A stretch of 64,000 bases of DNA from Hyphochytrium catenoides (taxonomy: Eukaryota > Protista > Hyphochytriomycota), in assembly GCA_900088475.1 (NCBI GenBank), contig FLMG01001544.1, positions 15,450-79,449 of the forward strand, written 5' to 3'. This document shows positions 4,601-61,000 of the stretch, in pieces. The translations under genes were made by a program, and so were the position numbers. Position 1 is the first letter of the stretch; every line of letters begins with the position of its first letter. Below the pieces are notes generated by a model that saw nothing but the letters and a program-made list of their open reading frames with translations, did not search any database and was not told the origin of the DNA.

Positions 4601-7193
4601 ATGAATCTGCAGCCAGCAGCAGCATCGGCGCCAGGAAAGCTAATACTCTTTGGCGAGCATGCGGTGGTGTATGGAGTTCCAGCCATCGCTGTGGCCCTCA
4701 GCGACCTCAGAGTGTGGGTAGAAGTGGTAGGACGACCCTCCTGTTCAGCTTGACCTGTTTAGCACCTGGTCCCTTATAAGCTACTCTTCTCCTCGTGGCT
4801 AAGTGTAGCTATGACTATATGTCTTGATCCGGATCGTCAAGTTCTGCGGCTCTTAATGACGTCTGCTGCATCAGGCTGAACCTCGTTGTTGCTAGCTCCC
4901 ATCGCTCTATTCTTTACTTGTGTGTCTGTTCCTCTCTCCCTCTTCCAGCACACCTCTTTTCCAACATCGCGTCTCTTCCTCTCGGTACAGAGCTGTGTGC
5001 TGGCTTTCCTCTTCCTTTCCGCTCCTAACAGCTCCTCCTTCCTCGCTTCCTTTCGCTCTAGACACCTTTGTCCGCCCCTATCATCGAGTTCCACCTGACA
5101 GACCTGATTAGTCCTGGCACTGGTGAAGGGGTCCGGCAATCGCTAGATATCCAGTTGCTAAGGCAGAAGTTTGCTGCGTACCTAGACGCCACAGGTGTGT
5201 GCGTCTCGCTCTTTCTCTCTGTCTCTCTAACCTACCTAAGGACTGCCTTCTTATGTGACTCCCTTGATATCAATGTCCTCACCCATCCTAGTACAGGTTA
5301 ATCTATATTTGTCTATTATACCCTGGATCTTAACTGTACAATTCCTCATCTCTTCCTCTCATGGGACCGCCGGTGCCTCATTCTCTCTCGTAGAGCTGCA
5401 CAAGCCTTCGCCGCCAAGCGCCGAGCTCATTGCAACACTCCAGGAAGTATTTAGTGGGCTGGGGGAGCTAGAGGAGAAGGCACTGAAGCCTCTTCTGTTC
5501 CTGTCACTCTCTGTCCTTTCAGACCTCCTCCGCAGGTGAGACAGGGTATGAGCTCTTACGATGCCGTTCCGTATCACGCCCTAGTTGAAGATAGAGCTGG
5601 AGAGAGTCTTTCGCATTGTCAAAGAGCTACTTACACTTCTAACCGGCGGGATATGCGAGGAGATTGTTCCTCGAGGCACGAGGCGGTCTAGACGATATAG
5701 CATTATACTCGTTTGTAGTGCAAAAGAGAGAGATGCCAAGCCAAGGCATAGAGACATAAGCTGTCAAGCAGTTGACCCTAGATCCTACCACTCATGAGAA
5801 AGTGACTTATTTTACGATTCTGACTCTAGACATTGCGCCTTCCTTCTGCCCCTCTCTGTTTCCCACCGTGCTTTCTAGGGATTCCTTCCAGACAGGCGTC
5901 CGCCTTACTGCTTCCAAGTCATCTCTCCCGGTCGGAGCTGGGTTGGGGTCCTCAGCGGCATTTTGTGTGGCAGCTGCAACTGCGCTCTATTATAGCAGAC
6001 CAGATAGCACCAAGTCTGGGCTTTCGGACGAAGTCTTCCTTCTAGGTAATGCAACAAGAGATGGAGGTGCAAAACAGGCAGGAATGGAACAAAGAGAGAG
6101 TTAAGAGGCATGCGGCAAGGATCAGCAACAATAGTGCTGGAAGGGCAGCCTTCGGACTGACGTAGCTCTTACAGGAGGCGAAGAGGCATGCCTTGGAGCT
6201 AGTGAAGAGAGAAAGGAAACTGTTGGCGGCAGGAAGCCTCCACCTACTACATGCTCGCTTCTGAACTCTTGGGCTTATATGGCTGAGATTTTAATGCACG
6301 GCAGTCCTTCAGGTCTGGACAATTCTCTCAGTGTCTTCGGTGGAGCGGCGCGGTTCCTTCGGGAAAAGCAGAATATTGAACAGATCAGTGGTTTCCCAGA
6401 GCTGAAGCTCTTCCTCACAAACACTAAAGTGCCACGAAGCACGAAGAAGTTAGTCGGAGATGTACGCGCCCTGTACGAGCGTTATCCAGCCATTATAGCA
6501 GGCATATGGAAAGCGATAGAGGGCATAGTTGATGCTTGGATGGACGTTATCAAGGACAAAAAGGGAACAGAAGAAAGTATAAACCAAGAAGACCGAGAGA
6601 AGGCGCTAGAAGAGCTAATAGATATGAATCAAGCGCTGTTGAGAGCGGTGGGAGTCAGCCACCCTGCCATTGAGAAAGTCTGCGAGGTTACGACAAAGCT
6701 TGGAATCCCTTCCAAACTAACAGGCGCAGGTAAGGAGGAAAATTAAAAGTGTAAAGAGCGGAAAGAGAGAAACGGAGAGAGCCATGGCAAGACAATCAGG
6801 ACGGGGTTTATTGCCGCTAGAACTCGCCGATCAAGACCATAGGAGAGAGAAGGCGAGCTGGTAGAAAGAAAGGAAAGAATACTACAATCGAAGGGTTGGC
6901 GGTAAAGGCTTTGGTTGAAGAGCAGAATGTCTGTTCGAAAGGTGGTCTGAGCCCGGAGATTGGCAGATAGAGATGCTTGCCAGTGATCGGTAGCAGAGGC
7001 TGTGTTCACTCTGACAAGGAGTTACTCATATCGCTGCTTTGGTTTGTCCACAGGAGGTGGAGGGTGCACGTTAAGCTTTGTGCCACGCAGTAGTGAGGCG
7101 AACGCCATGCGAGCAGTCGAGGAGCTGTCATCCTTGGGTTACGACGTATTCGAGACACGCGTGGGAGGGCCTGGAGTACTCCTGCATTTATAG
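4601..7193 (+). CDS. MVK: Mevalonate kinase (GHMP kinase), multi-exon
   Basis: ATG 4601 [33 protein letters not shown]; [12 protein letters not shown] (~5925-5960); [20 protein letters not shown] (~6265-6325); KLTGAG|GGGC split by an intron; TAG at 7191-7193. Confidence 0.96.
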
Positions 7194-8435
7194 CGATACG
7201 CATTATCAAGACGTCAAGTTAAGTGCAGAGAGCCACCGAGCAAGGGACTAGGCCGGGACTTAGGTGCATTTATTCACCGCCTTCTCTCCTTGTTAAGATC
7301 CTTTTTTTTACTTTCTTTTTCACTCTCCATAGGTGCTCTGTCTTTCTCGTCTCTTCTCCCGTTTTTCATCTCATGGCCCTTTAGGGGTAGCAACACAGCT
7401 CTGTGCCTGTTATCCTCTCTAGCACCAGGCCGAACGCAGTCCTTATACTTCTCACTCTTACATTATGGGACGTCATCTAAACTCTTCTGTGTCTCGGCTT
7501 GTCCCATTCTCTGTCCCTTCCCACTCTCTCGACGCTCTACAACTTCACCCGCAGTCTTGGTGTTCTTAACCTAAAAAGACTCGACCCGTATGTTATGCAT
7601 AAATCCGATTGCTCCCTCATCAATCTGCTCGCGTCTATCTGCTCGCGTCTCGGCTGAAGTCAAAAAGAGAGACTTTAACTCTCGCTTTTTAAAGATTTGC
7701 CTCTATATCTCACCAGACTCTTCGCTTCTGTTCTGTCACCACTCTTGTCCAACCCTTCCCTTACCCTCCTTCCTCGCACAGCCAAACAAGTGACTCTTGG
7801 ACGCTGTAGGCCCTCTGCAAAGCCCACTTTCTCATCCCTTGTGCTTTTAAGTGGGCCCAAATGCCTTCTCTATGTAAGAGGAAGAAAGCTTGATCGTGGA
7901 TATATATGCTAGATATATAGCGAGAGGGAAGAGGCCTCTCACAGCAGCAGCATCGGCAGCAGTGTTCAAGTGGGAGAAAGATCCTGTCTCTTCACCTTTC
8001 TGTCAACTGCAAGGGCAGGAAGGCCAAGTAAGATCCTTGCACGCATTGAGAGGGAGGGACACAGGAAGATAGGAGAATGGCTGCATTGTCTGCTTGAGGG
8101 GCGTCAGAATGGGATTATAAAGAGAGACAGAAGAGATAATGTAGGAAGAGAGACAAAGTAGAACTAACCCTTTAGTGATTGAGGAGGAGAAAATAGAGAG
8201 AGAGAGCGCGAGCGTAGGAGAGAGAGCTGATGTCAGCCTTGTATAACGCTCTTTCCTCCCGGAAGACCAATGGGAGAGACTGACCAAAAGAGACCTACAC
8301 TCCTCGCAAGGGGAGAAGAGACATAAAAGAGAAGCAGACACAGAAAAGAAGAATGCATGAAGACGGTGAGGAGTTATAACANNNNNNNNNNNNNNNNNNN
8401 NNNNNNNNNNNNNNNNNNNNNNNNNNNNNNNNNNN

Positions 8436-8502: not shown

Positions 8503-9637
8503 GGACCGCTTGACAAACTTTCTTGCTCTGGCGACATTTAGTTCGCTTTTACCATTATTACTATGCCGCTTATCACAAGATACAATGAGGGGAGGGCTGG
8601 ACCTATTATTACAATGGCCTCCAAGAAGACTGCAACATCATCCTCTTTGGCTCCACGCACACATCTCTCTCAACTCTCTCTCTCTCCCGCTCTTATATTT
8701 ACTTGTTCCCTGTATTTGTCTCCGCTCTGTCTCTCTCTCCTCTCCAGCTCTCTTCTGCTCATTGCTCCCTCTTGTCTCCTTCATGAACATAAGAGAGCTC
8801 AGCCATCGGCAGGAGCCAGAGACTTGCTGCAGCGACGAACGGACGAAGACAAGCAGCGCAGACATCCGTTGAGCCTTTCTCAATAGGAAGGCTTCTTCTC
8901 AGGAGAGGAATAACGAACGGGCCGTATGTCCCCTGTCCTTCAGAAGTACACTCGCTTTTCTTTCACCTCTTCCCATCGTGCTACTTCTTCTGTTCTTCTA
9001 TCTCTCTTTTGTGTCCTTTTCCACCTCAAGGGCCAGAACTGGTGATGAACTCTAGCGCTGAATCTGTCCTGTCGGCCATGCTGAGGAAAGAAAGGAGACT
9101 ATACTGAACAATAAAGGAGGTAAGCTGTTTGTGGTTGCGAACTCTCTGCCGGAAGCCTTGCCAGTGCTCTTTCTGTGGCAAGTCGTCCTTAGGGGCTCTG
9201 TTATCCGTTGATAGCTCTGCCTAGCCCATTAGCGCCTGCACAGGATGCTGTCTTCCTGGGTTTCTTCTTCTTCTTCTTCTCCATCTTCTGGCTCTCTCTT
9301 GTTCAAATGACACGGCCTGCAGCTTCTCATTATTCAACTATGGCCTCACAGGAAGGGATGTCTCAGATGGCAAGGGCTGTAGGCCAAGCATGCCTTTCTA
9401 TACGGCGTCTGGAATTGGCCGCTAGAGCTGTTCACACAGCCTTATCTCCATCCTCTTTCTCCCACTCACTCTAACTTTCTCCTCCTTAAACCTTACCTCT
9501 GTCTCTCTCCTCGGGTCCACTTCTCCATCTTCTCCATCTTCTCTTTCTTTTTCTCTATTTATTCCATCTCTATCCTTTCCTTATCCATGATGGGCATTCA
9601 GTGCTGAGTGAAGCGAGATCAAAGCTCCGCCGTTGAG

Positions 9638-12600
9638 ATGGACCCTCCTTTTGTGCCGCAAAGTCCGCCACTTTCTATGCCCATTACAGCGGACCCATCC
9701 ATCACCCCAATCACGAAAGACAGAGCCGGTAGCCCTTCGCTCCCCTTCCTTACACTTGTCTCTTTCTATCTCTCGTCCTGCCTCTGTCTTCGTGTACTTC
9801 CAGGTCATCCCTCATACGATCCTTTTAGTTTTTGCCATTGATCTCTCGCTGCCTCCCTCGCTTCGTCTTCTATCCTAAGTAGAGTTAACCTTCCGTCTCT
9901 TTCCCTTTTCCGCCTTTTCTGGTGACTTTGTTAAGAGTATTGCATCGTTCTTATGGTTGTCACACATATTCTTTGGCTCTCTCCTCCCAACAGAGCAAGG
10001 CTTACTCTTTGCTGATGGACAAAAACCAAAGTCTAAGATGCCGCGGACTCCACCCCTTTCCTCCAGTGGCCCTTCTTGCATCGCACCGCCTTTGCTCTCT
10101 CTCTCTTTCGGTCAACAACTGGTTGCTACGTCCAACCTCGTCTCTTCCTCAGAGATCTCCCGGTTACTTTGTCCTATGAAGAGACTCCAGGTCTCAGGGT
10201 TTAGCGATATTGAGGCCCATAAGTCACGCGTCGTCAAACGGGAGAGCTCAACGGCTTCATCGTTCTCAGTCGAGAGGTTCGCTTTCACCGTGAATACTAT
10301 ATCTTCTTTGCAGCCTTCCTTCTTGAGCTATTTAGCGTTTCCGTGTCTGAGTTATCTCAGGACTCAGTCTGACTCTCTTGTTCAGCGTCTACTCTTTATT
10401 TATCATTTTGTTGATGTCTAGCTTCCAACTTCTTGGGGCGCTAGGACCTCTTCAAAGCCCCTGTAGTGCCCTTGGCATCTTTTGCGAAGCGTACCATGAT
10501 TCAATGGTTCCACTGTAGCTTGTCATGTGGTCATTTCACTTCGTTTCCTTTGCTCTAAGGAAACAAGCATTAAGAAAAAAGTTAGCAAGACCCTAAGTCT
10601 CTTCCCCAGTTTGTCTGTTAAGCTCTCAGGTCTGAAGAGTCAAGAGCGCTTTGTTAAGGGAGAAGGCCGCACCAGGGCTGTAGCTGGCAGAGACTTTAGC
10701 CACCTACCCTCTGACATAGTGGTGGCTATTCTAGCGATGCTTAATGATGGTACGACATCCAAACGCTTTTAGTTGTGGAAGAGCCCCTTGAAATTTGCTC
10801 TCAGCTGCCCTATTTGGGCACGGTGGTACCTTCCCATTGTAATGCCGGCGGGGTTGGCAGGAGCCTTACCCCATGTGTTTAACTCCTTTTGCCTAATATC
10901 AACTGCCTGTAAAGTATTGTGGCCCTAAAGAACGCTCGTTGTTTACCTCTCGCAGAGGACGTCTTGCTTCGATTCGAGGCTGTTTGCAGACTTTTTCGCG
11001 ACCTATCCTTAAAGGTAAAATCCTTCAGGGCAGTTCTCACTTCTCCTCTAGCCGGGGCACCTCCGCTGGGATGCTTCATATTCTTCTCTCATAAGACCCT
11101 GCGAACTGTTTTCAACAAACTTCCTAATCATTTGCCGAACATTCTCCATACAAGTGCCCAGAAAGATGGCTTCGAGTGGACCTATTGGACCGAGATCTCG
11201 TCATAAATGACCCTATGCTGAAGAGCTTCCCTAAGTGAGTTAGAACGAAGGGGTCTTATCCGCCTTGGGCTTCGGCCATAACACTTCTAATGCTCACTCG
11301 CTTTCTAATGCTCACTCCTTCCCGCGGGCTTGTAGGCGCTTGCGAGGAGTCTCCAAATTGATCCTCGGGGATTGCCCATCCCTCAAGAGAGCCCATGAAA
11401 GGTCAGTCATAGTTGCCTCTCTCCATGGGGGCAGGTACATCTGTATCCATAGTATTAGCATCAGCACAGGCCTCTTGACCTTCTAATCCGCCCACGCCTC
11501 GTCTTGAACCTAACGGTCTCTCGTAGTATATATCAGATGTTGCAGAGCTGCCCCTGGGTGCAGTCAGTGCGTTTATGTGCCAGGTATGCTTTACCGGAGG
11601 AGAGAAAAGAGGACGAGCTATATGTAGGATAAGGAAGGGGTAGATGAAAAGTGGAAAGGACGACGTCTGAGAAGTGCGAAGCTATGCAGAAGAAGTGAAA
11701 CCGAAGGATCTTGATTGACACTCTTTCCAGCGACTTCCCGCGTGCTGTGCTGTTAAATTCCAAGTTGCAAGAGCTGATGAGCCGCTCACTCTTGTCAGTG
11801 CAAGGCAGTGTCCTCAGGCGCGGAGGAGGTCAGATGCCTCTTCTTATTAGCATAGATTAGCCTCTCCGCCATGATTGGTTTTCTATAGTGATCACTGGCA
11901 TCTCGATCCTCCCTCCTCGGGATGAATCTACCGCTACCTAACAGTCTACGTAGGCTCAGTCGTGTTATCTTAGTGCTTTCAGACTTTTGTCGGCCGAGCC
12001 ATCTTCCTTTGTGAGCTATCCCGGTCTATCATCTTGCTAACGTTTGGTGGTCACCTTTCTCTCAACTGCCCTGTCTGCCCTACTTCTAGCGATTAGTGGA
12101 GTTCATCTGCTGCTGGGAGTCAACCTTCTTGCCCTTGTTCGGCACTTCACACTGAGCGACGAGGAGTTTCTTCGTGCATTTCTCATTGGCCGATACTTTC
12201 TAGGTGGGTGGAGGCAAGCTTGAACAGCAGCAAGGTGGTCTATGAATGACAACAAAAGAGACAGTGTACACTGGTTATCGGAAGGCGGATAGGGCACGGA
12301 GTCTGCAAACATTGAGCTGCTGACTCATTTGCTTCATCTGTCTCTTCTATTTTTCCCGTAGACAACCATAAAGCACGACAAACTGCAGCCAGGAAAGGGT
12401 TGCTGCCCGACAGTTTAGTCATCTTCTCCCTTTATGCTGCCTGTAAACTAGGCAACAGGAGAGGAGAGTTGCACATGTCAGACATCGTACAGGTTTACAC
12501 CCGGAACCACCTGCAGGGAGACAGAGCGAGTAAGAGGAGGAGCATTCTACTCGCAGTCGAGGAGAGCCGAAGGTTTGAATATTGCTTGTCGTTTTTCCAA

Positions 12601-13141
12601 CAAGCATCGCGTGTTAGTGGTCTTACAATAGCCCCGACCTCTCCCATTTATCCCTGGCGTGCCTCCTTCGTTCTATCCTACGACCCTCGGTTAGCTTCGG
12701 CTCGTACTTTGTCAGCTCTCTGCCCAAGGATGCCAAGTCCATGACTCGCTTCATCGCCCTCTACAATTCACTATTTATTGAAGCCGCCAAACCGGCGGTT
12801 GCTCTGTTGCTAACAGTGGGGATTAGCCCCGTAGTGCAGCGGGTAAAGGAGAGAGACCAGAAGGAAATGACAGACAAGACGTGCTCAGACCCATCCGGAA
12901 GCTTTCGGCCTTGTTCTGACATATTGAGAGCAGAACTATAGCCCCTTCATTATAGAGTTTGTGAGGCAGATGTGAAGACGAGAAAGAAAGTCTTCTCTCT
13001 CTCTGTGAGTGTCTCTCTGTGAGTGTCTCTCTGTTGTCTCTCTCTTTCCCTCTTTGATGCCAGGATGCCAGGAAGTCTCTGCAAGCATGTCTGCCAACTT
13101 CCTCCTCCTCTGAAGGCGGCACAACTTTCCTCTTCACATAG
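9638..13141 (+). CDS. F-box + short LRR-like linker + retinoblastoma pocket-B (Rb_B)-like domain protein; start codon uncertain (may extend to ~8614)
   Basis: Phase-consistent GT-AG exons: 10630-10749, 10956-11014, 11155-11234, 11336-11401, 11527-11583, 11731-11828, 12090-12203, 12362-12572, 12716-12842, 13064-13141. They give the F-box DFSHLPSDIVVAILAMLNDEDVLLRFEAVCRLFRDLSLKCPERWLRVDL and the Rb_B-like DSLVIFSLYAACKL...ELHMSDIVQVY...RSILL...FIALYNSLFIEAAK. Confidence 0.78.
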
Positions 13142-13306
13142 AGATTGGCTTAGTATTTCTAATACTAGAACCCGAATAGCAGGCCGCATAGAATAAAGAC
13201 TGTCAATATTTGAAATATATCCCATAGGCCGAAGGGATGTGTGCCAGAGATCTTGGTTCGCACGGCCCGAGGCGCACTGCCAGAGGGGCTGCTTCCTCTC
13301 GATGTG

Positions 13307-16070
13307 ATGAAGCTTGGTAAGAAGCGGCACGACAGCGGAGGGGAAGAGACAACAGGCGAAGAGACAAGGAAGGTATCTGGAGGCAGCAGAGCCGGGTGGC
13401 CTCAGGAGAGCTGGCTTGAGCACATTCCAGGGTCTATCAGCCTCAGTGAGAAGGGATATATGGGTAATAACATGGTGCTCACCTCCCCGATAGCTACGTC
13501 CGCTCAACGCCTGGGGCCACATCCTTCCTATGGGACATCCCGGCATAGCCTCCGTAATGCACGTGAGGAGGTTGCCTCGCTCATCAAGCCATCCCCTGGT
13601 TTGTCAAGTTTACAATCAAAGGATGAGAGCGATGGGCAGCGCCAACGCCGCGCCTTCATAGTATCTCTTATTGCACTGTGTGCTGTAACGATCCTTCTGT
13701 ACCTCTGTCATTCTGAAGGCTTGAAGGGAGCCAATGACATAGAAAGCCAGGTCTTGAATCTTGCGACAAAAGGCGATGGACAGAATAGTGACCAGGAGCT
13801 TGGGCGGGTCGACTTCCCAGGGAGAAAGGATCTCATTCGGCACCTACCTGGAGCCCCCGCTGGTTATCATTCAGCCCAATTCAGCGGCTTTCTACACGCC
13901 TCGGGAGGGAGGAACATCCACTACTGGCTGGCAGAGAGCCAGTCCAGGCATCCTGACGCTGACCCGGTTGTCGTCTGGCTCAATGGAGGCCCGGGAGCCA
14001 GCTCCCTAGGCGGTCTGCTCTATGAAAACGGCCCCCTTACGATTCTCGATGACGGCCAGACCTTGGTTAGGAACCCTTTTACCTGGAACAGACGGGCCAA
14101 CGTTCTCTATCTTGAGTCTCCATGCGGCGTAGGGTTCAGTTATCAAGATGATGGTGACTATGAGGATGATGACTTGAGCCAAGCTCGTCATAACTATGCG
14201 GCGCTAGTGGACTTCTATCGAAAGTTCGCTCACCTTAAAGAGAATGGGCTGTACATCACAGGAGAGAGCTACGGAGGAGTTTATGTCCCCACGCTCGCCA
14301 TGGAAATCGTGGAAAGGAATGAAGAGAGGAAGAGAGAGAAAGGCAGGGAACGGGCAGGGACAATGTGGATGAACCTGAAGGGTTTCGCCGTCGGGAACGG
14401 CATAAACGAGTTTGTCTTTAGCTCGATGTTCCCCTTCGCGTACTACCACGGCCTGATTAGCTCCAGGCAATATGAAGCCTTCAAGACCGCCTGTCCTAGC
14501 ATCAAGGTATCCTCTACTTTCTCTTCCTCTCACCTCAGCCGTAACCTTGAGCCGCCTTCTAAGCCTTAGACTCTCATCCAGTTGTCCGATCTCTCTCTTA
14601 ACCTTGGAACAGAACCTCTTAGCCGAAGCCTCACCTTCTCCCAACTGCTTGCTGTCTCTATCTGTTCTGAACTAGGAGCGAACTAAAACTCCTCATCAAA
14701 GCGATGCAAGATGTGCTCAGGTGCAGATGGAAATCTTCATCCAAGCTTACACGTCTCACATCAACATGTACGATATCTATAGAGATTGCTGGGGTGGATC
14801 CCCCTTGGCTGCGCCGGGCAATCCTCCTTCCTTTTCCTCACAGTCATCCACATCCTCTGAGACTGCTGGAACAGGAAGTAGTGGATCAAGAGAGGTACTA
14901 AGGAAGAGACTCGCTCTCACTCCTGTTCCCATCGCCATGTGCATCAATAGCACTGCAGCCCAGTACTACTTCAACACTCCAGAGGTGCGGAAGGCCATAA
15001 ATATCCCTTCAGCTGCTGGACACTGGTCTGCAGTGACAATGACAAACGTCTCCGCTATGGGACCCTTCAGAGTGCCTCATCCGCTCAATTATGCTCGGAC
15101 CCTGAACAACGAAGTGACAACCCTCTGGAGACAATTGCTGGAGAAGGGAATAAAAGGCCTGATCTATAATGGTACACAAGGACCCTGCAGATTTGCCAAT
15201 GGCGATGTGTTATACTGCTTATCAGCCGGGTTCTCGTTTCTCTCACTTGCTTGCTTTAGCTGGTCCAATCGTCTCCCTAACTAGTACTCCACTACGTTGC
15301 CCTTGCAACTCAGATGAGGTCTGCATCTTTCCTTATTCTCTTGTCAGATAGTTCACCAGAATGGCCTTAGCTTCAAAGTGTCAACATCAGGAGTCTGGTT
15401 GTTTGTTCGTAGCTTATCAGCCTTCTCTCTTCCTTGGGTTCTAGCGCGTTTCACTATCAAATACTATTGGCCTCAGCCGCTTACCCTCTTGTTCTTCATG
15501 TCGCTGCGTTGTGATTCCAGGGGACACCGACTTGATGTGCAACTTTCTAAGCGGTGAATGGGCGGTAGAAAGCCTAAACCTGACAGAGAAGGTAGCCTGG
15601 TCACCTTGGAACATCGATGGCTCCCAACAGTCTGCGGGGTTCATGAAGGAGTTTGAGGAGGGGCTGACGTTTGTCACGATTAAAGGGGCAGGCCACATGG
15701 TAAGGCCTTACCTCACCTATTGTTGCTTGACCAAGCGGTCACAGGTGCCTGGTTGTCTATGAGCGTAGAGGTATTCCGGCTCGGCTGTAATCTCTGCATG
15801 TGGCAAGCTCAGAGGAACTTGTATTGCTTCACACAGAATCTTCCCGCATCTTCCCGGCTAAATGTTAACAGTGTATTCTCTCCTCTTTGACAGGTTCCCC
15901 AATGGCGTCCAGCAGAAGCGCAGTTCATGATTGAGCGCTTTCTCCTCCGGGACCCGCCCCATCAGCCATGGACTGCCAGTGATCCGCAAGTAAAAATGCC
16001 AGGTGATGGGAGCAGGGTGGAGGCACAGAAGTTGAGAACAACAGCAAAACAGAATGCTGGCCCTCCCTAA
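13307..16070 (+). CDS. Serine carboxypeptidase, family S10, with predicted type II membrane anchor
   Basis: WLNGGPGASS, ANVLYLESPCGVGFSY, catalytic Ser GESYGG, Asp GDTDLMCN, His GAGHM|VP. Hydrophobic segment AFIVSLIALCAVTILLYLC precedes the catalytic domain. Start could be 13307 or 13460. Confidence 0.95.
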
Positions 16071-34911: not shown

Positions 34912-37900
34912 ATGATGACTCCTCCTCACTCTCAAAAGACAGCCCACGGAGTTGCTTTATTGGTTAGCTCTGCCGGAGAGGAGTCCGATAATCAAGACAA
35001 AAGCGGTCCAGGACTTCGAGGGTTGCGTGGCCAGTCCTTAAAGAGGTCCGTTCAAGTGGAGGTTTTCTCGAAGAAACCCTTCCGGAAGGACTCCGCGGGA
35101 AGGGTGCGGCGTGTGCTTCTAGCCTTCCAGGTACTTGAGGCGCAATCTTAACCTTTATGGCCCTCTCCTAAGCAATCTCCTTTCAGGTATCCAAGGTTGC
35201 AAATCGCGGGATGTTTAGCAGCAACCGAGGCCCAAACAATGATAAGATGAGGATAATCTGCGCAACTATGGCAGCAACTTCAGATGTCGAAAGAGTAAAT
35301 AGAAGAAAGAGTGCAAGCGCTCCAGGTGGGTCAAAAGTTCTTATCGTTCAGCTAGAGCACTTATAGGATCTTCTCTATGTCGCGCTCTAAGTCGAGCAAC
35401 TCGCTCTCGGATCTCTACCAGCTCGGGGCTGCGTCCCTAATCGCCTGTCACTCTCTTTTCCCGTCTTTTCTGCGACAATTTGTCTGTTACCCAGCAGAAG
35501 CCTCAGGAGACGCTCAGGTGGAAATGCATTACATTACCATAGAGCAGAACCTGGCCTTTAATGTTCGCAGGTCATTTCCTCTGAGTGATCTCGTGAAAGT
35601 TGAAGGGAGCAACGTCGGGGATGGCTCCGACTTCACCCTCACCTTTGAAAAAGAGTCTCCATACCGTTGGGCCGCAGCATCCAAGCAGCTGAAGGAGGAG
35701 ATTCTCTGGTGTCTCCTTCACCTTTGCCATCGGTTTCGTGTAAGGTGCCAGCTTAAAGCAGAAGGATCTCGACTTATCTTGGGCCTTTCCATTTGCAGGA
35801 CACAATGCCACAGCTCTTCCACGTAGATGAGCTCGCTCTGAACCAAAGAGCAGCAGAGGAGAAATTCACGCTGAAGTACGAGACCATTAACTGGGAGGCA
35901 GAGAACAAGGTACGTCTAAGAGACGGCCCCTTGTGTGAGTCCACCATACTCACTCCTCTCCAGGGCGAAGCACCTGACTCTGAATACGAGATCGCTGACG
36001 AGAACAATGCTGAAAGCCCTAAGCACAGTCATGCTGAAGGGCTGCTCTCCAGTGATGAGCAGGCAGATCTCACATTCTTCATGAAATCAGACGATTGGTA
36101 AGGGCGTCTCGTCTTCTCGACTAGTTCACCTTGATCCGATAGTATGATGGGTGATTTCTATCGACCTACGCCGGGGGCTTCTAGAGCGCGGTTTCTCTCG
36201 TTCCACCGACATAGTTATTTTGACAGGCAACTCTTCAAAAAAGATGCTGAAGGCTTAAAAGATCAACTACGGAAGAGGTTATATGAGTCTGAATGTAAAA
36301 ATTTGGAGTACCTTTTACAATGGGAAGCTACACAGAGACAGGGAAACTCAGTAAGACCTTACGGCTTAGCTCTCTTATTATGACGCCACTAAAACTTCAC
36401 ATTGCCAAACTGGGAAAACTCCACCTCTGAGACTGTCTTATCATTGTTTTATACTTAAAGTTTGCTTTCAGGCGCTCTTTCCGTGTATTAGCCTCCCTCT
36501 TAACAGTATATCTTTGAACTTTTACCTGTGATGTAGACATTTCCGACTGGGGAATTCACTGTGCCTCTTCTGGTCTTTTGGCATCGATGTCCAGCACGGG
36601 ATCCCTTGTAGCCCCCTCTCTCTTTTTCCCTAAGAAAATCTTTCTACGTGTCCCTTTTATAGTGCCATTGTTCCCATTACGGCTACCACGGACTAATTGC
36701 CGTTGGGGNNNNNNNNNNNNNNNNNNNNNNNNNNNNNNNNNCCAAAGCATGGAAATATGGCTTGGAGGCTATCAGCAAGCGCTCGCCGTGGTACAGGAGG
36801 ACATGAAAGAGATTCAGGTGAGTTGAGATTACAAGCTAGCTACGGGGCTTTGGAAGCCCATCGCCCTTACAATCCACTTCTTTCTTAGGGCTTGAATAAC
36901 AAGCTTGAGGTGCAGTCTAGAAACCAGCGACTACTTGAAAAGGAGCTAGAGACAATCATCAAGGTCCGCTTGCGTCTTTGTATCCCTTATTCTGCAAGCC
37001 CGCTAAAGCCGCCAGTCGCGTTTGTAGAGCGTGGAACTCTCCGCAGCTGCCCAGGAAATATTTCAAAACCCAGTAAAAGCTCTAGAAGATAGCCAGGACG
37101 ACCCTCTTGGAGAAAAGAAAGAAAAGCTTGTCCAAGCTGCAGAGGAGCTTCAAAAAGCCATTGAGGCTTCTGACAAAGGACCAGGACGCATGGTAGGCAT
37201 CATGGAGTCGGTCGTCTTCTTTGAGGGCTAGATCTGGGACGAATGGGGTTGATTAGGGGAATCCACTTTTTTTCCATATCATTACTAGTTTGCCTCATTC
37301 TTGTCTCAATGTTGTTGTACACAGTTATCTACTATCCGAGAGCGCGGAAACGACCTTCGAGAAACTGCACAAGACTTCAGTGACGCTCTGTGCACGTGAG
37401 ACAGGGCTTTAACCACTTCTTCATAAAAGTTTATGAACGTTTTTTGCCAGTTGTACCTCTCTGACTTTGGTTTGCAGTGGACTACGGCGCGCCTTATCTT
37501 CGACACTTAATGTATGCTTTTATTGAAGCCAGACTGACACTTGTTCTATTCGTAGAACTATCAAAGCCCATTTCAAAGAAGCTACTGTGGGAGATGCTCA
37601 GCAGCGGCGTCGCTCGTCTTCTGCATTAAACTTCATGAACGCCAAAGGACAGCTGGACATTGACTCGCTCTCAACAATCGATAACAGAAGTATACAAATC
37701 TCGCTCATGGAAGACAAGGTCCCTTTCATTGTTGCCAACTTCGCCATTCCTTGCCAGCTTGGACTCCGACTCTCTCACTCTTCCAAATTTCACCTCCAAA
37801 GTATCTAAATTGCTGCCAGAGGATGTCTTCTGCCCATTGTCTCCAATTTAAGATCTTTATATGACGGTGGATCGTTGGGTACGAAATATGTTTCTAGCCT

Positions 37901-58061: not shown

Positions 58062-61000
58062 ATGCAGCTTCAGGAGGCAACGGCGCTCATACAACACGCA
58101 GAGCAAAGTCAAGCTGCTGCTGCTGAACGCGAGTTGCAGTCAGCTAAAGAAGGTGATCACTGGTCATACGGAGTGCCATAACTATGGACCAAACCAGCTA
58201 CTTCTCCTCCTCCCTTATCCGTACATCACTTATACATCACATGTTGGTACAAGAGGCTTTCTTACGATAACGACGTGACACTGCCACAAATTTCTCTCGG
58301 TCCTGTGTGTCACTTCTTCCCGAGTCGCTCACTAACTCTTTGATAGAGCAATTTACTTACTGACCATCATCTGGATGTAGGCTAGGCTTAGTGCAAAACT
58401 CTCAAGGGAAGTGGAGCCAGCCAATAGCCAGCTCTAGCATGGTAATGGGACGGCGGGTTGGTCATGAGACATACCTGAATCTCATAACCTCCCTTTCTTA
58501 GTCCTGATTATAGCCAACGCTTGAGGGAGGCAATGAATATATTGTTCCACGAGAATCCCAGAAGAACCCGGACTTAAGGCTGCAGCTTCGCTCCGTGGGA
58601 GATTACTAGCCTTCCAAAATGGGAACTTCTCAGTAGCCGCCACAGCGAAAAGAGCTCCATTATGAGAATGTACTGTTGGACACCACTCCAACAGCTTTGG
58701 CCCTACCCAGCACAGGTCTTTGATGCTCATCTAGCTCATGCATAAGACTAGGAATCGATTGTAGGTGACACAACAATTGTTTAACAGGGCTTTCTTGCTG
58801 TAAGCACCTGCTTAAATATATTTACCTATACCAAGCTTGATTATGTGACCCCGCTATAGCGCTGAGGTAGCGAGAGCTGCTTGTCAGCCTAGACTTACGC
58901 CTCAAAGCTCGATTGGGTCAACATTGTCGGTGATGTAAAATGGTCTGCCCAGGAAGGGCCTGCGCGGCTTATTCAATGATGTCCGCATTCATTTCTCTCC
59001 TGCAGCTTCCTCAAGAGTTCCGNNNNNNNNNNNNNNNNNNNNNNNNNNNNNNNNNNNNNNNNNNNNNNNNNNNNNNNNNNNNNNNNNNNNNNNNNNNNNN
59101 NNNNNNNNNNNNNNNNNNNNNNNNNNNNNNNTCATCAATTCTGTTGCCCATTTCATCTAGTGAGGATATGTTAAGGAGAACACTTTTGCATCTGACTGCA
59201 AAAAGACGCGCGACTCTAACACTGAACGCATTGCAAAGGATGGAGGGGAAAGGATATTTCTTGTCAAGATCCCGTCTGACATATTGGTGAAACGCTGTTG
59301 CTGTAGACATCAAGAGGATCAACAGCGAGCGTTAACATGACTATTCGAGACTTGCAAGAGCAAACGCACTCCGTACCATTTGTTCCAACAAAGTTTGGAC
59401 CTTAGCCAAGATAATCGGTTAACACCAGCGAATAGGACGCATGCGCCCGCCCAAAACAAAATTTCCCTTAGTTGTGGTCTATAACAAGCAAGATAAAGTG
59501 CTAATCCTCATACCACTGCCGTAAGGTCCTGAGCCGTCTGGTCTTCTTCATGAGAGGGCTTGTCTTGAGTTGGCTGGCTCTGTGGGCAAAGAAGGGGACG
59601 GATTTAGAAGGGCTATTCAGTACCTGACGGCGACCAGCCAGGTGACCTGCGCAACTCTCTGGGGCTCTTACCATCTTGCCTTTGAGGTGTATTTCACTCT
59701 CTGCGTTACCCTTTTAACTCTTCCGTCGAGGGTATCGCGAGGTGATGTTCTGATAGAGGCTTGGCGAGACACTTCGCTGGCATTAAATCTCAAGTGAGCC
59801 TTCCACGCACGCCGCGGTGTATGATAGTCGTTGCTCTGCCTGGCATGGACTTCAAGAAGCTGTGGGGAAGCAAGCTTGAGCACTCATCAAAAGTCAAAAG
59901 AAGCTTCCACAGTTCACAGAGCTTCACCTGTTGTACGCGTTACAGCTGCGTGTGTCTGTTATATGATAGCGGTTAGTGGCTTCTAGACCCTACCACTCTA
60001 TCCTAAGATTGTACTCGACAATTGCTTGGTACTAAAAGGTAGGGCTATAAAAAGAGGCTTAGTTCTTAGGTAAAAGCCCCTGTCTAAGATTATACTACTT
60101 ATTAGGGTTTGACAAGTAAAGCTATCCAATGCTCCTGAGATTGACGCGTTTAAGGTAAGCCCTCGTAGTTGATGTTGAACCTACCCTCAATAGCCCTCAG
60201 GGCATCTGCAGTGTACAAGTGACCTGAAGCCCCACTCCTGTCCAGAAAGGTCAGCCTTCATGCGCAGACTAGAGACAGACGCAGCATCACCCAGCAACAG
60301 AAAAGTCCACGAACAGGAGTTGATGCTAAGTAGTATCGAAACACCACGCCCAGTTTAGAAGCACAGGACCTCCTGAAGAGGTGACATCCGCCATCGTCCC
60401 TGGCCACCATGGAGATTGAGAGAGTTCATTACACTTATGTTAGCTGAGTCGGCTCTTGATGGCCCGTCCGTCAGAACACATTCCCCTAGGAGGTTATGTT
60501 ATCCCTAGAGCCCCCTAGTGACGAGGCTCGACTGAGCCTCAGTTCTACTACTGTCAACTGTGCTGGACTGATGGAGAGAGGTACACCCTGAGTTTCGTAG
60601 AGATGTCACAATGGAGAGACTCTAATCTGGACGTCCGGGAATAGGTAATGGCGGTCTAGTCGGTCTCTCCTGGGCACCTCAAGAGGGAACCACCTGGAGC
60701 AGAAAGAGGAATGCCAAAGAGTTAGACCTGCATTCCAGGGTTCTCGATAAAAGGAAAAAGCATTTGATCGAAGCGTGAGTCGGTCAACACTATGCCAGCG
60801 CAAGCAAATCAGAGAAATAGTCTCCACTCATCCACTCCATCTTCGTTTCTCGCTTTAGGACACAATTAAACACTTCGGCCATGCTACCTCTTCCTCCGCA
60901 TCATGTGCGGAGCGCTTACAGCTCTACAGAGGAGCATGCGAGTCAGGAAGGAGGCGATGATGGTCCAGCTCCAATGTCTCTGGAAGGGGATGCCGCAGAG

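What the first reader, a model, noticed from the sequence alone, without database searches (positions are those of the whole stretch)
10630..13141. F-box protein fused to an isolated retinoblastoma pocket-B domain with an intact LxCxE-binding cleft
Seen: ten consecutive exons with GT-AG ends splice in consistent phase into one frame. The order is F-box (LPSDIVVAILAML-NDEDVLLRFEAVCRLFRDL-CPERWLRVDL), then two LRR-like units (VSKLILGDCPSL; QMLQSCPWVQSVRL), then GVHLLLGVNLLALVRHFTLSDEEFLRAFLIGRYFLDNH...DSLVIFSLYAACKL...ELHMSDIVQVY...KRRSILL...FIALYNSLFIEAAK. Established: human RB1 pocket B reads KVYRLAYLRLNTLC...DQIMMCSMYGICKV...DLKFKIIVTAY...FKRVLI...IIVFYNSVFMQRLK, and Y709, K713, Y756 and N757 form the LxCxE cleft. 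All four have counterparts here (SLY, ACK, LYN). Canonical Rb proteins carry pocket A directly before B and have no F-box; no pocket A is visible between the F-box and B box here. Inference: an SCF substrate receptor that has co-opted the Rb cleft to ubiquitylate LxCxE proteins, either host cell-cycle/chromatin factors or viral Rb antagonists (a decoy trap). I know of no described protein with this architecture.
Basis: partly seen in the sequence, partly recalled or inferred. Interest (0 to 1): 0.92.

Follow-up and report, generated by a model that had tools for sequence, protein, structure and literature searches.

The report
F-box protein with Rb pocket-B-like domain
An unannotated protist gene joins a clear F-box (the handle that plugs a protein into an SCF ubiquitin ligase) to a helical end-domain whose only database resemblance, weak but collinear, is to the B half of the retinoblastoma pocket. 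If real, this would be a new way of using the Rb peptide-binding cleft.

Summary
The exon chain is real at sequence level. Nine or ten GT-AG exons (10610/10630 to 12941, or to 13141) join in one open frame. One junction (12203|12362) is seen spliced in a public run.

The spliced E1-E3 peptide passes both Pfam F-box models above their curated cut-offs.

The spliced E8-E9 core (101 aa) hits only one of 24,736 Pfam families, RB_B (E 0.008, 16.6 bits). It matches collinearly to profile positions 55-144 of 144, but lies below the cut-off of 26.9. Local alignment to real mammalian RB1 fragments pairs Y263/K267 and Y332/N333 with RB1 Y709/K713 and Y756/N757.

There is no room and no hit for pocket A, and no cyclin or TFIIB hit.

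Weak points:
- Single exons, PDB sequence search, the 1.8-billion-protein library, the ESM Atlas and a single-sequence AlphaFold model all gave nothing.
- Two other sub-threshold Pfam hits at similar E-values turned up on unrelated pieces.
- No transcript links the F-box exons to the B-like exons.
- No orthologue was found.

Verdict: a probable (about 0.5) SCF substrate receptor with a divergent, isolated Rb-B-like domain. This is a new variant of the cyclin F design (F-box plus cyclin-fold reader). LxCxE binding is inferred, not shown. The full domain could not be scored because a spliced product has no reference.

The parts
10176..10276 (+). Proposed first coding exon (ATG at 10176; 33 codons plus 2 bases), N-terminal Ser/Lys/Arg-rich leader
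   Evidence: It is the only simple in-phase ATG exon found upstream. Its donor at 10277 joins the acceptor at 10609/10610. The codon score is best in this frame. Haplotype indels lie only in the flanking 10279-10534. Inferred, with no transcript.
10610..10749 (+).
   Evidence: The acceptor is ttccccag|T at 10609/10610.
10695..11178 (+). F-box domain (model residues 63-108), split over exons 1-3
   Evidence: The spliced 52-aa peptide scores 29.5 bits on PF12937 F-box-like (cut-off 24.3, profile 1-45 of 47). It scores 26.1 bits on PF00646 F-box (cut-off 20.5). The end-to-end match also validates junctions 10749|10956 and 11014|11155.
11167..11788 (+). About three Cys-containing LRR-like units (model residues ~105-187), exons 3-6
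   Evidence: Read directly from the translation: patterns such as L-I-L-G-D-C-P-S-L and C-P-W-V-Q-S-V-R-L. Not tested with a profile.
11828..12821 (+). Rb pocket-B-like helical domain (model residues 201-351), exons 7-9
   Evidence: The core, residues 251-351, hits only PF01857 RB_B: E 0.0079, 16.6 bits, query 5-91 against profile 55-144 of 144. The E7/E8 junction is seen spliced in run X4. AlphaFold single-sequence predicts four helices at low confidence.
12409..12450 (+). Motif D-S-L-V-I-F-S-L-Y-A-A-C-K-L (residues 255-268); Y263 and K267 pair with RB1 Y709 and K713
   Evidence: Local alignment to RB1 fragment P0005, shuffle p about 0.04. It is the only match to this pattern in the window.
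12750..12791 (+). Motif F-I-A-L-Y-N-S-L-F-I-E-A-A-K (residues 328-341); I329, Y332, N333 and K341 pair with RB1 I753, Y756, N757 and K765
   Evidence: Local alignment to RB1 fragments P0004 and P0003, shuffle p about 0.014. It is the only match to this pattern in the window.
12695..12941 (+).
   Evidence: Both are in phase. The codon score slightly favours the spliced form, +2.9 against +0.4. Undecided.

Best explanation
One gene of ten or eleven short exons encodes a protein of about 390 aa.

Layout:
- a disordered basic/Ser-rich leader;
- an F-box that docks on Skp1 of an SCF (Skp1-Cul1-Rbx1) ubiquitin ligase;
- about three Cys-type leucine-rich repeats as a rigid linker, as in FBXL proteins;
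- a C-terminal helical domain of about 150 aa that is a highly divergent homologue of the B half of the retinoblastoma pocket, standing alone without pocket A.

The B-like domain keeps the residues that form the LxCxE peptide groove in RB1: Y263, K267, I329, Y332, N333 and K341. The most likely mechanism is therefore that this groove reads an LxCxE-like short linear motif in substrate proteins and presents them to the E2 on the cullin arm for ubiquitylation. This is the same logic as cyclin F, where a cyclin-fold domain behind an F-box reads a short motif.

Shown: the exon chain, the F-box, one splice junction, and a unique weak RB_B profile match with aligned cleft residues.

Inferred: that all exons lie in one mRNA, that the domain adopts the Rb-B fold, Skp1 binding, LxCxE binding, and the nature of the substrates.
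For: Gene model:
- The exon chain is open and in phase with GT-AG ends.
- The codon bias fits the chosen frame in 9 of 10 exons.
- The B-like exons have no start codon of their own in frame.
- Intron sizes are homogeneous, 101-333 nt.
- The E7/E8 intron is removed in a contig of run X4.

F-box: above both curated Pfam cut-offs, over the whole profile.

Rb-B-like domain:
- RB_B is the only Pfam family hit by the spliced 101-aa core, at E 0.0079. Eighty-seven residues are laid collinearly on the last 90 profile positions with almost no net gap.
- No cyclin, TFIIB or other helical family appears.
- Two separate segments align to real RB1 fragments in the right order, with shuffle p of 0.04 and 0.014. 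They pair Y/K and Y/N of the LxCxE cleft.
- The signature patterns are unique in the window.

Precedent: cyclin F is an F-box protein that uses a cyclin-fold domain as substrate receptor (PMC12232547, found).
Against: Against Rb-B homology:
- The RB_B score is 10 bits under Pfam's gathering threshold, and was obtained on two thirds of the domain only.
- Exons searched singly give no hit even at E 10.
- phmmer against all PDB chains, which include RB, p107 and p130, gives nothing at E 10.
- Two other sub-threshold Pfam hits of similar E-value appeared among about 30 unrelated pieces. DUF2536 (E 0.0065) fell on a GHMP-kinase exon and DNA_binding_1 (E 0.0043) on an upstream ORF. E-values near 0.005 are therefore not rare here.
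- No relative of exon 8 exists in 1.84 billion representative proteins.
- The AlphaFold model is poor (pLDDT 54.7) and its fold search is meaningless.

Against the function and the fusion:
- In RB1 the B domain is thought to need pocket A for stable folding (my knowledge, Lee et al. 1998).
- No read links exon 6 to exon 7. Intergenic spacers in this genome seem short: only about 160-360 nt to the next gene.
Confidence: 0.5

Rival explanations
1. It is an ordinary orphan F-box/LRR protein. Its C-terminal helical domain is unrelated to Rb, and the RB_B resemblance is a chance or convergent match of two short amphipathic-helix motifs, picked out by a reader scanning very many windows.
For: - The score is below the curated threshold.
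- Comparable sub-threshold hits occur on unrelated pieces.
- All piecewise, PDB, Atlas and fold searches are blank.
- The pairwise p-values are only 0.01-0.04.
Against: - The match covers 87 residues collinearly, up to the last profile position. The spurious hits seen here cover only 36-41 residues.
- The best-matching positions are exactly the family's functional signature, in the right order and with family-like spacing.
- RB_B is the only family reported.
Confidence: 0.25
2. There are two transcription units, or only partial isoforms. An F-box/LRR gene ends after exon 6, and a separate small gene encodes the isolated B-like domain, so no fusion protein exists.
For: - No transcript evidence crosses 11828|12090. 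The only RNA-like contig covers 12163-12543.
- That intron is the longest internal one, 261 nt.
- Reading through the exon 6 donor meets a stop after 14 codons.
- An ATG at 11870 followed by a GT could give a tiny in-phase first exon (read).
- Spacing to the next gene is short.
Against: - Exon 7 and its open frame contain no ATG.
- The phase is compatible across the gap.
- Intron size is within the range of the others.
- Codon bias is continuous.
- An F-box with only three LRRs, and a B-box alone, would each be odder than the fusion.
Confidence: 0.15
3. The B-like domain is a real Rb relative but not a degron reader. The protein acts as a competitor or decoy for LxCxE partners of the canonical Rb. 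Its abundance, or that of its partner, is set through the F-box: either self-turnover or a non-SCF Skp1 complex.
For: The evidence is the same as for the best explanation. Some F-box proteins work outside SCF ligases (my knowledge, for example Ctf13 and Rcy1).
Against: Nothing here distinguishes it from the substrate-receptor model. Substrate recruitment is the default role of a domain C-terminal to an F-box.
Confidence: 0.1

Closest known systems
Cyclin F (CCNF/FBXO1), SCF substrate receptor
   Same: It has an N-terminal F-box followed by a cyclin-fold helical domain that recruits substrates through a short linear motif, and it acts in the E2F/Rb cell-cycle network (PMC12232547).
   Different: - Cyclin F carries true cyclin boxes and reads Cy/RxL-type motifs with its hydrophobic patch.
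- Here no cyclin family is hit.
- Here the resemblance is to Rb pocket B and its LxCxE groove.
- Here LRR-like units lie between the F-box and the domain.
Retinoblastoma pocket proteins (RB1, p107, p130, plant RBR)
   Same: The B-box signature motifs and the four LxCxE-cleft residues are conserved, and the Pfam RB_B match is collinear.
   Different: - It has no pocket A, no RbN and no C-terminal domain.
- It therefore has no A-B groove for the E2F transactivation domain.
- An F-box is present.
- The score is under the family threshold.
- The protein is about 390 aa instead of about 900-1000.
FBXL-type F-box proteins such as Skp2
   Same: The F-box is followed directly by Cys-containing leucine-rich repeats (read). 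Skp2 also works on the Rb family (my knowledge).
   Different: It has only about three repeats, which then give way to a non-LRR helical domain. The LRRs were not confirmed by a profile.
Nanovirus Clink (my knowledge, Aronson et al. 2000, not checked here)
   Same: It links the LxCxE/Rb interaction to Skp1 in one polypeptide.
   Different: It is the mirror image. Clink carries the LxCxE motif plus an F-box, to bring Rb to SCF. This protein carries the LxCxE-binding cleft plus an F-box.

Membership tests
F-box proteins (Pfam PF00646 / PF12937) | Profile match above the curated gathering score | tested here: met
   29.5 bits against 24.3 (PF12937, profile 1-45 of 47) and 26.1 against 20.5 (PF00646) on the spliced E1-E3 peptide.
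F-box proteins (Pfam PF00646 / PF12937) | Binds Skp1 and assembles into an SCF ligase | not testable with these tools
   Needs a pull-down, or a co-fold with the organism's Skp1.
RB_B domain (Pfam PF01857) | Profile match above the curated gathering score (26.9 bits) | tested here: not met
   The 101-aa E8-E9 core scores 16.6 bits, E 0.0079, and RB_B is the only family hit. Single exons give no hit. The full 151-aa domain was not submitted, because a spliced product has no reference and long strings may not be typed.
RB_B domain (Pfam PF01857) | Conserved LxCxE-cleft residues (RB1 Y709, K713, Y756, N757) | tested here: met
   Local alignments to RB1 fragments P0005 and P0004 pair Y263/K267 and Y332/N333 with them. 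The numbering of the RB1 residues is from my knowledge.
RB_B domain (Pfam PF01857) | Cyclin-fold B-box structure | tested here: inconclusive
   The single-sequence AlphaFold model of the core has pLDDT 54.7 and four helices. Foldseek against PDB gives no match with E under 2.
Pocket proteins (RB/p107/p130/RBR) | Pocket A (PF01858) directly before B, forming the A-B pocket | tested here: not met
   Only about 95 residues, LRR-like, lie between the F-box and the B-like domain. Neither the exons nor the upstream ORFs hit RB_A.
Cyclin F-like F-box proteins | Cyclin_N / Cyclin_C box behind the F-box | tested here: not met
   No cyclin family is reported for any piece or for the core at E up to 10.
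FBXL (F-box plus LRR) | Leucine-rich repeats recognised by a profile | not tested
   Seen by eye only in the translation of exons 3-6.

The most novel reading that the evidence does not exclude
This would be the first natural E3-ligase receptor built on an isolated retinoblastoma B-box. The ancient LxCxE groove, normally used by Rb to hold chromatin and cell-cycle partners and exploited by viral oncoproteins, is here wired to SCF as a degron reader. It would destroy LxCxE-bearing proteins such as D-type cyclins, DREAM or HDAC-type partners, or viral Rb antagonists.
Probability: 0.3. Interest if true: 0.8.

Novelty: new variant of a known kind. Interest (0 to 1): 0.6.

Why it matters
The B-box of Rb has been seen only as half of the A-B pocket. 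A free-standing B-like domain behind an F-box would have three consequences:
- The LxCxE groove could fold and evolve as an independent module.
- LxCxE would gain a second meaning, as a degradation signal as well as an Rb-docking motif.
- Protist cell-cycle research would gain a direct handle on which proteins carry functional LxCxE motifs outside animals and plants.

It would also be a natural template for engineered degraders that target LxCxE proteins.

If the resemblance is only chance, the gene is one more lineage-specific F-box protein in a genome that seems rich in F-box fusions.

Tried and rejected
Searches that gave nothing:
- Pfam on six single exons: no hit at E 10.
- phmmer against PDB with exon 8, exon 9 and the 101-aa core: nothing.
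- ESM Atlas with exon 8 and exon 9: only chance-level neighbours, including dNK at 0.82.
- Exhaustive phmmer of exon 8 against 1.84 billion representatives: two hits, both tandem-repeat junk.
- A search for RNA runs: none listed.
- Two spliced-junction patterns in metagenome contigs, hoping for a cDNA contig that would give a contiguous reference: nothing.
- Exon 8 in viral contigs: nothing.

Searches that fell short:
The length rule let through only three short fragments, too few for a profile.
- Searching the neighbouring S10 carboxypeptidase to name the organism gave no self hit. The best identity was about 54%, to oomycetes.
- AlphaFold on the 101-aa core without an alignment, followed by Foldseek against PDB, gave low confidence and meaningless matches.

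Rejected:
- My first 5' exon guess (10177-10276 joined to 10630) was out of frame.
- The idea that pocket A lies upstream is rejected.

Left out on purpose:
- Submitting the whole 151-aa domain or the 390-aa protein. The spliced product has no reference.
- Cutting the rest of the protein into further typed pieces.
Full report
**Setting**

The window is about 50% G+C and intron-rich, so it is eukaryotic.
- Upstream on the + strand lies a GHMP/mevalonate-kinase-like gene (5772-6746; PF00288 and PF08544).
- Downstream lies an S10 serine carboxypeptidase (13241 onward; PF00450).
- The carboxypeptidase has no self hit among 5.8 billion proteins. Its best identities are about 50-54%, mostly to oomycetes. 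The genome is therefore not annotated in the libraries and has no close annotated relative.
- DNA runs X1-X3 of 'organism A' hold the locus.

**The exon chain**

Translating 10400-13300 in three frames and joining the open segments at GT/AG sites gives nine exons:
- 10630-10749
- 10956-11014
- 11155-11234
- 11336-11401
- 11527-11583
- 11731-11828
- 12090-12203
- 12362-12572
- 12695-12941

They read as one open frame of 349 codons ending in TAG.

It has a slightly better codon score than the read-through. Which 3' end is used is undecided.

A codon-usage log-odds score was trained on ten long coding ORFs of the same window. It is highest and positive in the chosen frame for 9 of 10 exons. It is mostly negative in all frames of the introns.

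Exon 1 has no ATG, so the protein must start upstream. That gives 390 aa.

Haplotype indels seen in run X1 fall only at 10279-10534, inside the proposed first intron. None is listed in the rest of the gene.

**Transcript evidence**

No RNA run was listed. Run X4 (2024, 'organism B', kind unknown) holds one 224-nt contig that joins 12200 to 12359. With the stated 3-nt ambiguity this is my E7/E8 junction 12203|12362, GT..AG. The locus is therefore transcribed and that intron is removed.

Nothing covers the other junctions. In particular nothing covers 11828|12090, the junction that ties the F-box/LRR half to the B-like half.

**F-box**

The spliced peptide across E1-E3 (52 aa, copied) gives:
- PF12937 F-box-like: 29.5 bits (cut-off 24.3), over profile positions 1-45 of 47.
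- PF00646: 26.1 bits (cut-off 20.5).

The domain runs over two junctions, so this also validates them.

The next ~80 residues (exons 3-6) show about three Cys-type LRR-like units by eye. I did not test them with a profile.

**The C-terminal domain**

Blank results:
- Single exons give no Pfam hit even at E 10.
- PDB sequence searches give no hit.
- Atlas neighbours are uninformative.
- Exon 8 has no true relative among 1.84 billion representative proteins.

Positive result: the junction-spanning core (101 aa, model residues 251-351) hits exactly one of 24,736 Pfam families, PF01857 RB_B. The E-value is 0.0079 at 16.6 bits. Query residues 5-91 lie on profile positions 55-144 of 144. This is a long, nearly gap-free, collinear match that runs to the end of the model. 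It is 10 bits under the curated cut-off.

I brought three real RB1 fragments into the session (P0003-P0005) and ran local alignments with 5000 shuffles:
- L-Y-A-A-C-K-L pairs with M-Y-G-I-C-K-V (p about 0.04).
- I-A-L-Y-N-S-L-F-I-E-A-A-K pairs with I-V-F-Y-N-S-V-F-M-Q-R-L-K (p about 0.014).
- The two pairs are in the right order.

In RB1 numbering (my knowledge, Lee, Russo and Pavletich 1998) this pairs:
- Y263/K267 with Y709/K713
- Y332/N333 with Y756/N757
- I329 with I753
- K341 with K765

Two regular expressions for these signatures each match once in the whole six-frame translation of the window, both here. I wrote them after seeing the sequence, so this is only illustrative.

No cyclin or TFIIB family appears anywhere. 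Pocket A is absent: there is no room for it, and no upstream ORF hits RB_A.

**How much is the RB_B hit worth?**

Nominally, E 0.008 is significant. But among about 30 other pieces I scanned, two sub-threshold hits of similar E-value appeared:
- DUF2536, E 0.0065, on a GHMP-kinase exon. This one is certainly spurious.
- DNA_binding_1, E 0.0043, on ORF 9208-9471. This one may or may not be real.

Such E-values are therefore commoner here than their face value suggests.

In favour of the hit:
- The spurious hits are short (36-41 residues), while the RB_B match spans 87 residues.
- The RB_B match ends with the profile.
- It peaks on the family's functional signature.

I put homology at about 0.65-0.7.

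The obvious test is scoring the whole 151-aa domain, including exon 7. By eye, exon 7 resembles the first B-box helix (V-x-x-L-A-x-x-R-x-x-T-L). I left this test out because a spliced product has no reference and long strings may not be typed.

A single-sequence AlphaFold model of the core predicts four helices at low confidence (pLDDT 54.7, pTM 0.36). Foldseek against PDB returned nothing under E 2. That result is uninformative, not negative.

**One gene or two?**

For one gene:
- The phase is compatible at every junction.
- There is no in-frame ATG in or before exon 7.
- Introns are homogeneous, 101-333 nt.
- Codon bias is continuous.

Against:
- No transcript crosses 11828|12090.
- Spacers between genes here are short.
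- A tiny alternative first exon (ATG at 11870) could be imagined.

I put one gene at about 0.8.

**Mechanism**

The most likely reading is an SCF substrate receptor. The F-box binds Skp1, the short LRR stretch acts as a rigid linker, and the Rb-B-like domain binds substrates through its conserved groove. The preferred motif would resemble LxCxE.

This is the cyclin F design, an F-box plus a cyclin-fold motif reader (PMC12232547), with a different cyclin-fold module. It is also the mirror image of nanovirus Clink, which has an LxCxE motif plus an F-box (my knowledge).

The protein is not a pocket protein. It lacks pocket A, so it has no A-B groove and no E2F binding of the Rb kind.

Full-text searches for F-box together with RB_B, pocket B or LxCxE found no description of this architecture. 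InterPro could not be queried.

Other first-stage notes report several other F-box fusions in this genome. They are unchecked. They fit a lineage that shuffles domains onto F-boxes.

**Verdict**

- Observation: confirmed.
- Interpretation: partly supported.
- Combined probability that a fusion protein exists and its end-domain is a true Rb-B relative: about 0.5.
- Probability that it also reads LxCxE-type degrons: about 0.3.
- Classification: a new variant of a known kind (an F-box receptor with a cyclin-fold reader).
- It is worth a cDNA check, a full-length profile search and a peptide-binding test.

Noticed in passing
window 9208-9471 (+), core 9290-9400: An ORF in the otherwise low-complexity spacer gives a sub-threshold Pfam hit to the MGMT DNA-binding domain (PF01035, E 0.0043, 17.3 bits, profile 7-42 of 81). 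It contains the motif A-R-A-V-G-Q-A. No P-C-H-R active-site motif was found nearby in any frame. It is either a relic or small exon of an alkyltransferase-like gene, or chance.
   Followed up: partly
window 12490 and 12493: Runs X1 (DNA) and X4 (spliced contig) both read G and C where the window has C and G. This changes two adjacent codons of exon 8, Q-V to E-L, inside the B-like domain. It is a strain or allele difference, or an assembly error.
   Followed up: no
window 9697-10534: Run X1 shows dense substitutions and small indels between two half-depth contig sets, which look like two haplotypes. They lie upstream of the gene and in its proposed first intron. No indel is listed from 10610 to 12941.
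   Followed up: no
window 8382-8435, 36709-36741, 59023-59131: Three runs of N, which are assembly gaps. The first is flanked by GA/CT microsatellite sequence.
   Followed up: no
window 5772-6746 (+) and 13241-15762 (+): The neighbours are a GHMP/mevalonate-kinase-like gene (PF00288, PF08544) and an S10 serine carboxypeptidase (PF00450). For the carboxypeptidase, the best database identities are only about 50-54%, mostly oomycetes, with no self hit. The genome is unannotated in the libraries.
   Followed up: partly
window 11015-11154: Intron 2 stays open in the frame of exon 2 and has a positive codon score, +8.0. A retained-intron isoform would truncate the F-box after its second helix.
   Followed up: no
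window 6279-6743 (+): A GHMP-kinase exon also gives a clearly spurious sub-threshold hit to DUF2536 (E 0.0065). This is a useful calibration: Pfam E-values near 0.005 are not rare for short pieces of this genome.
   Followed up: yes
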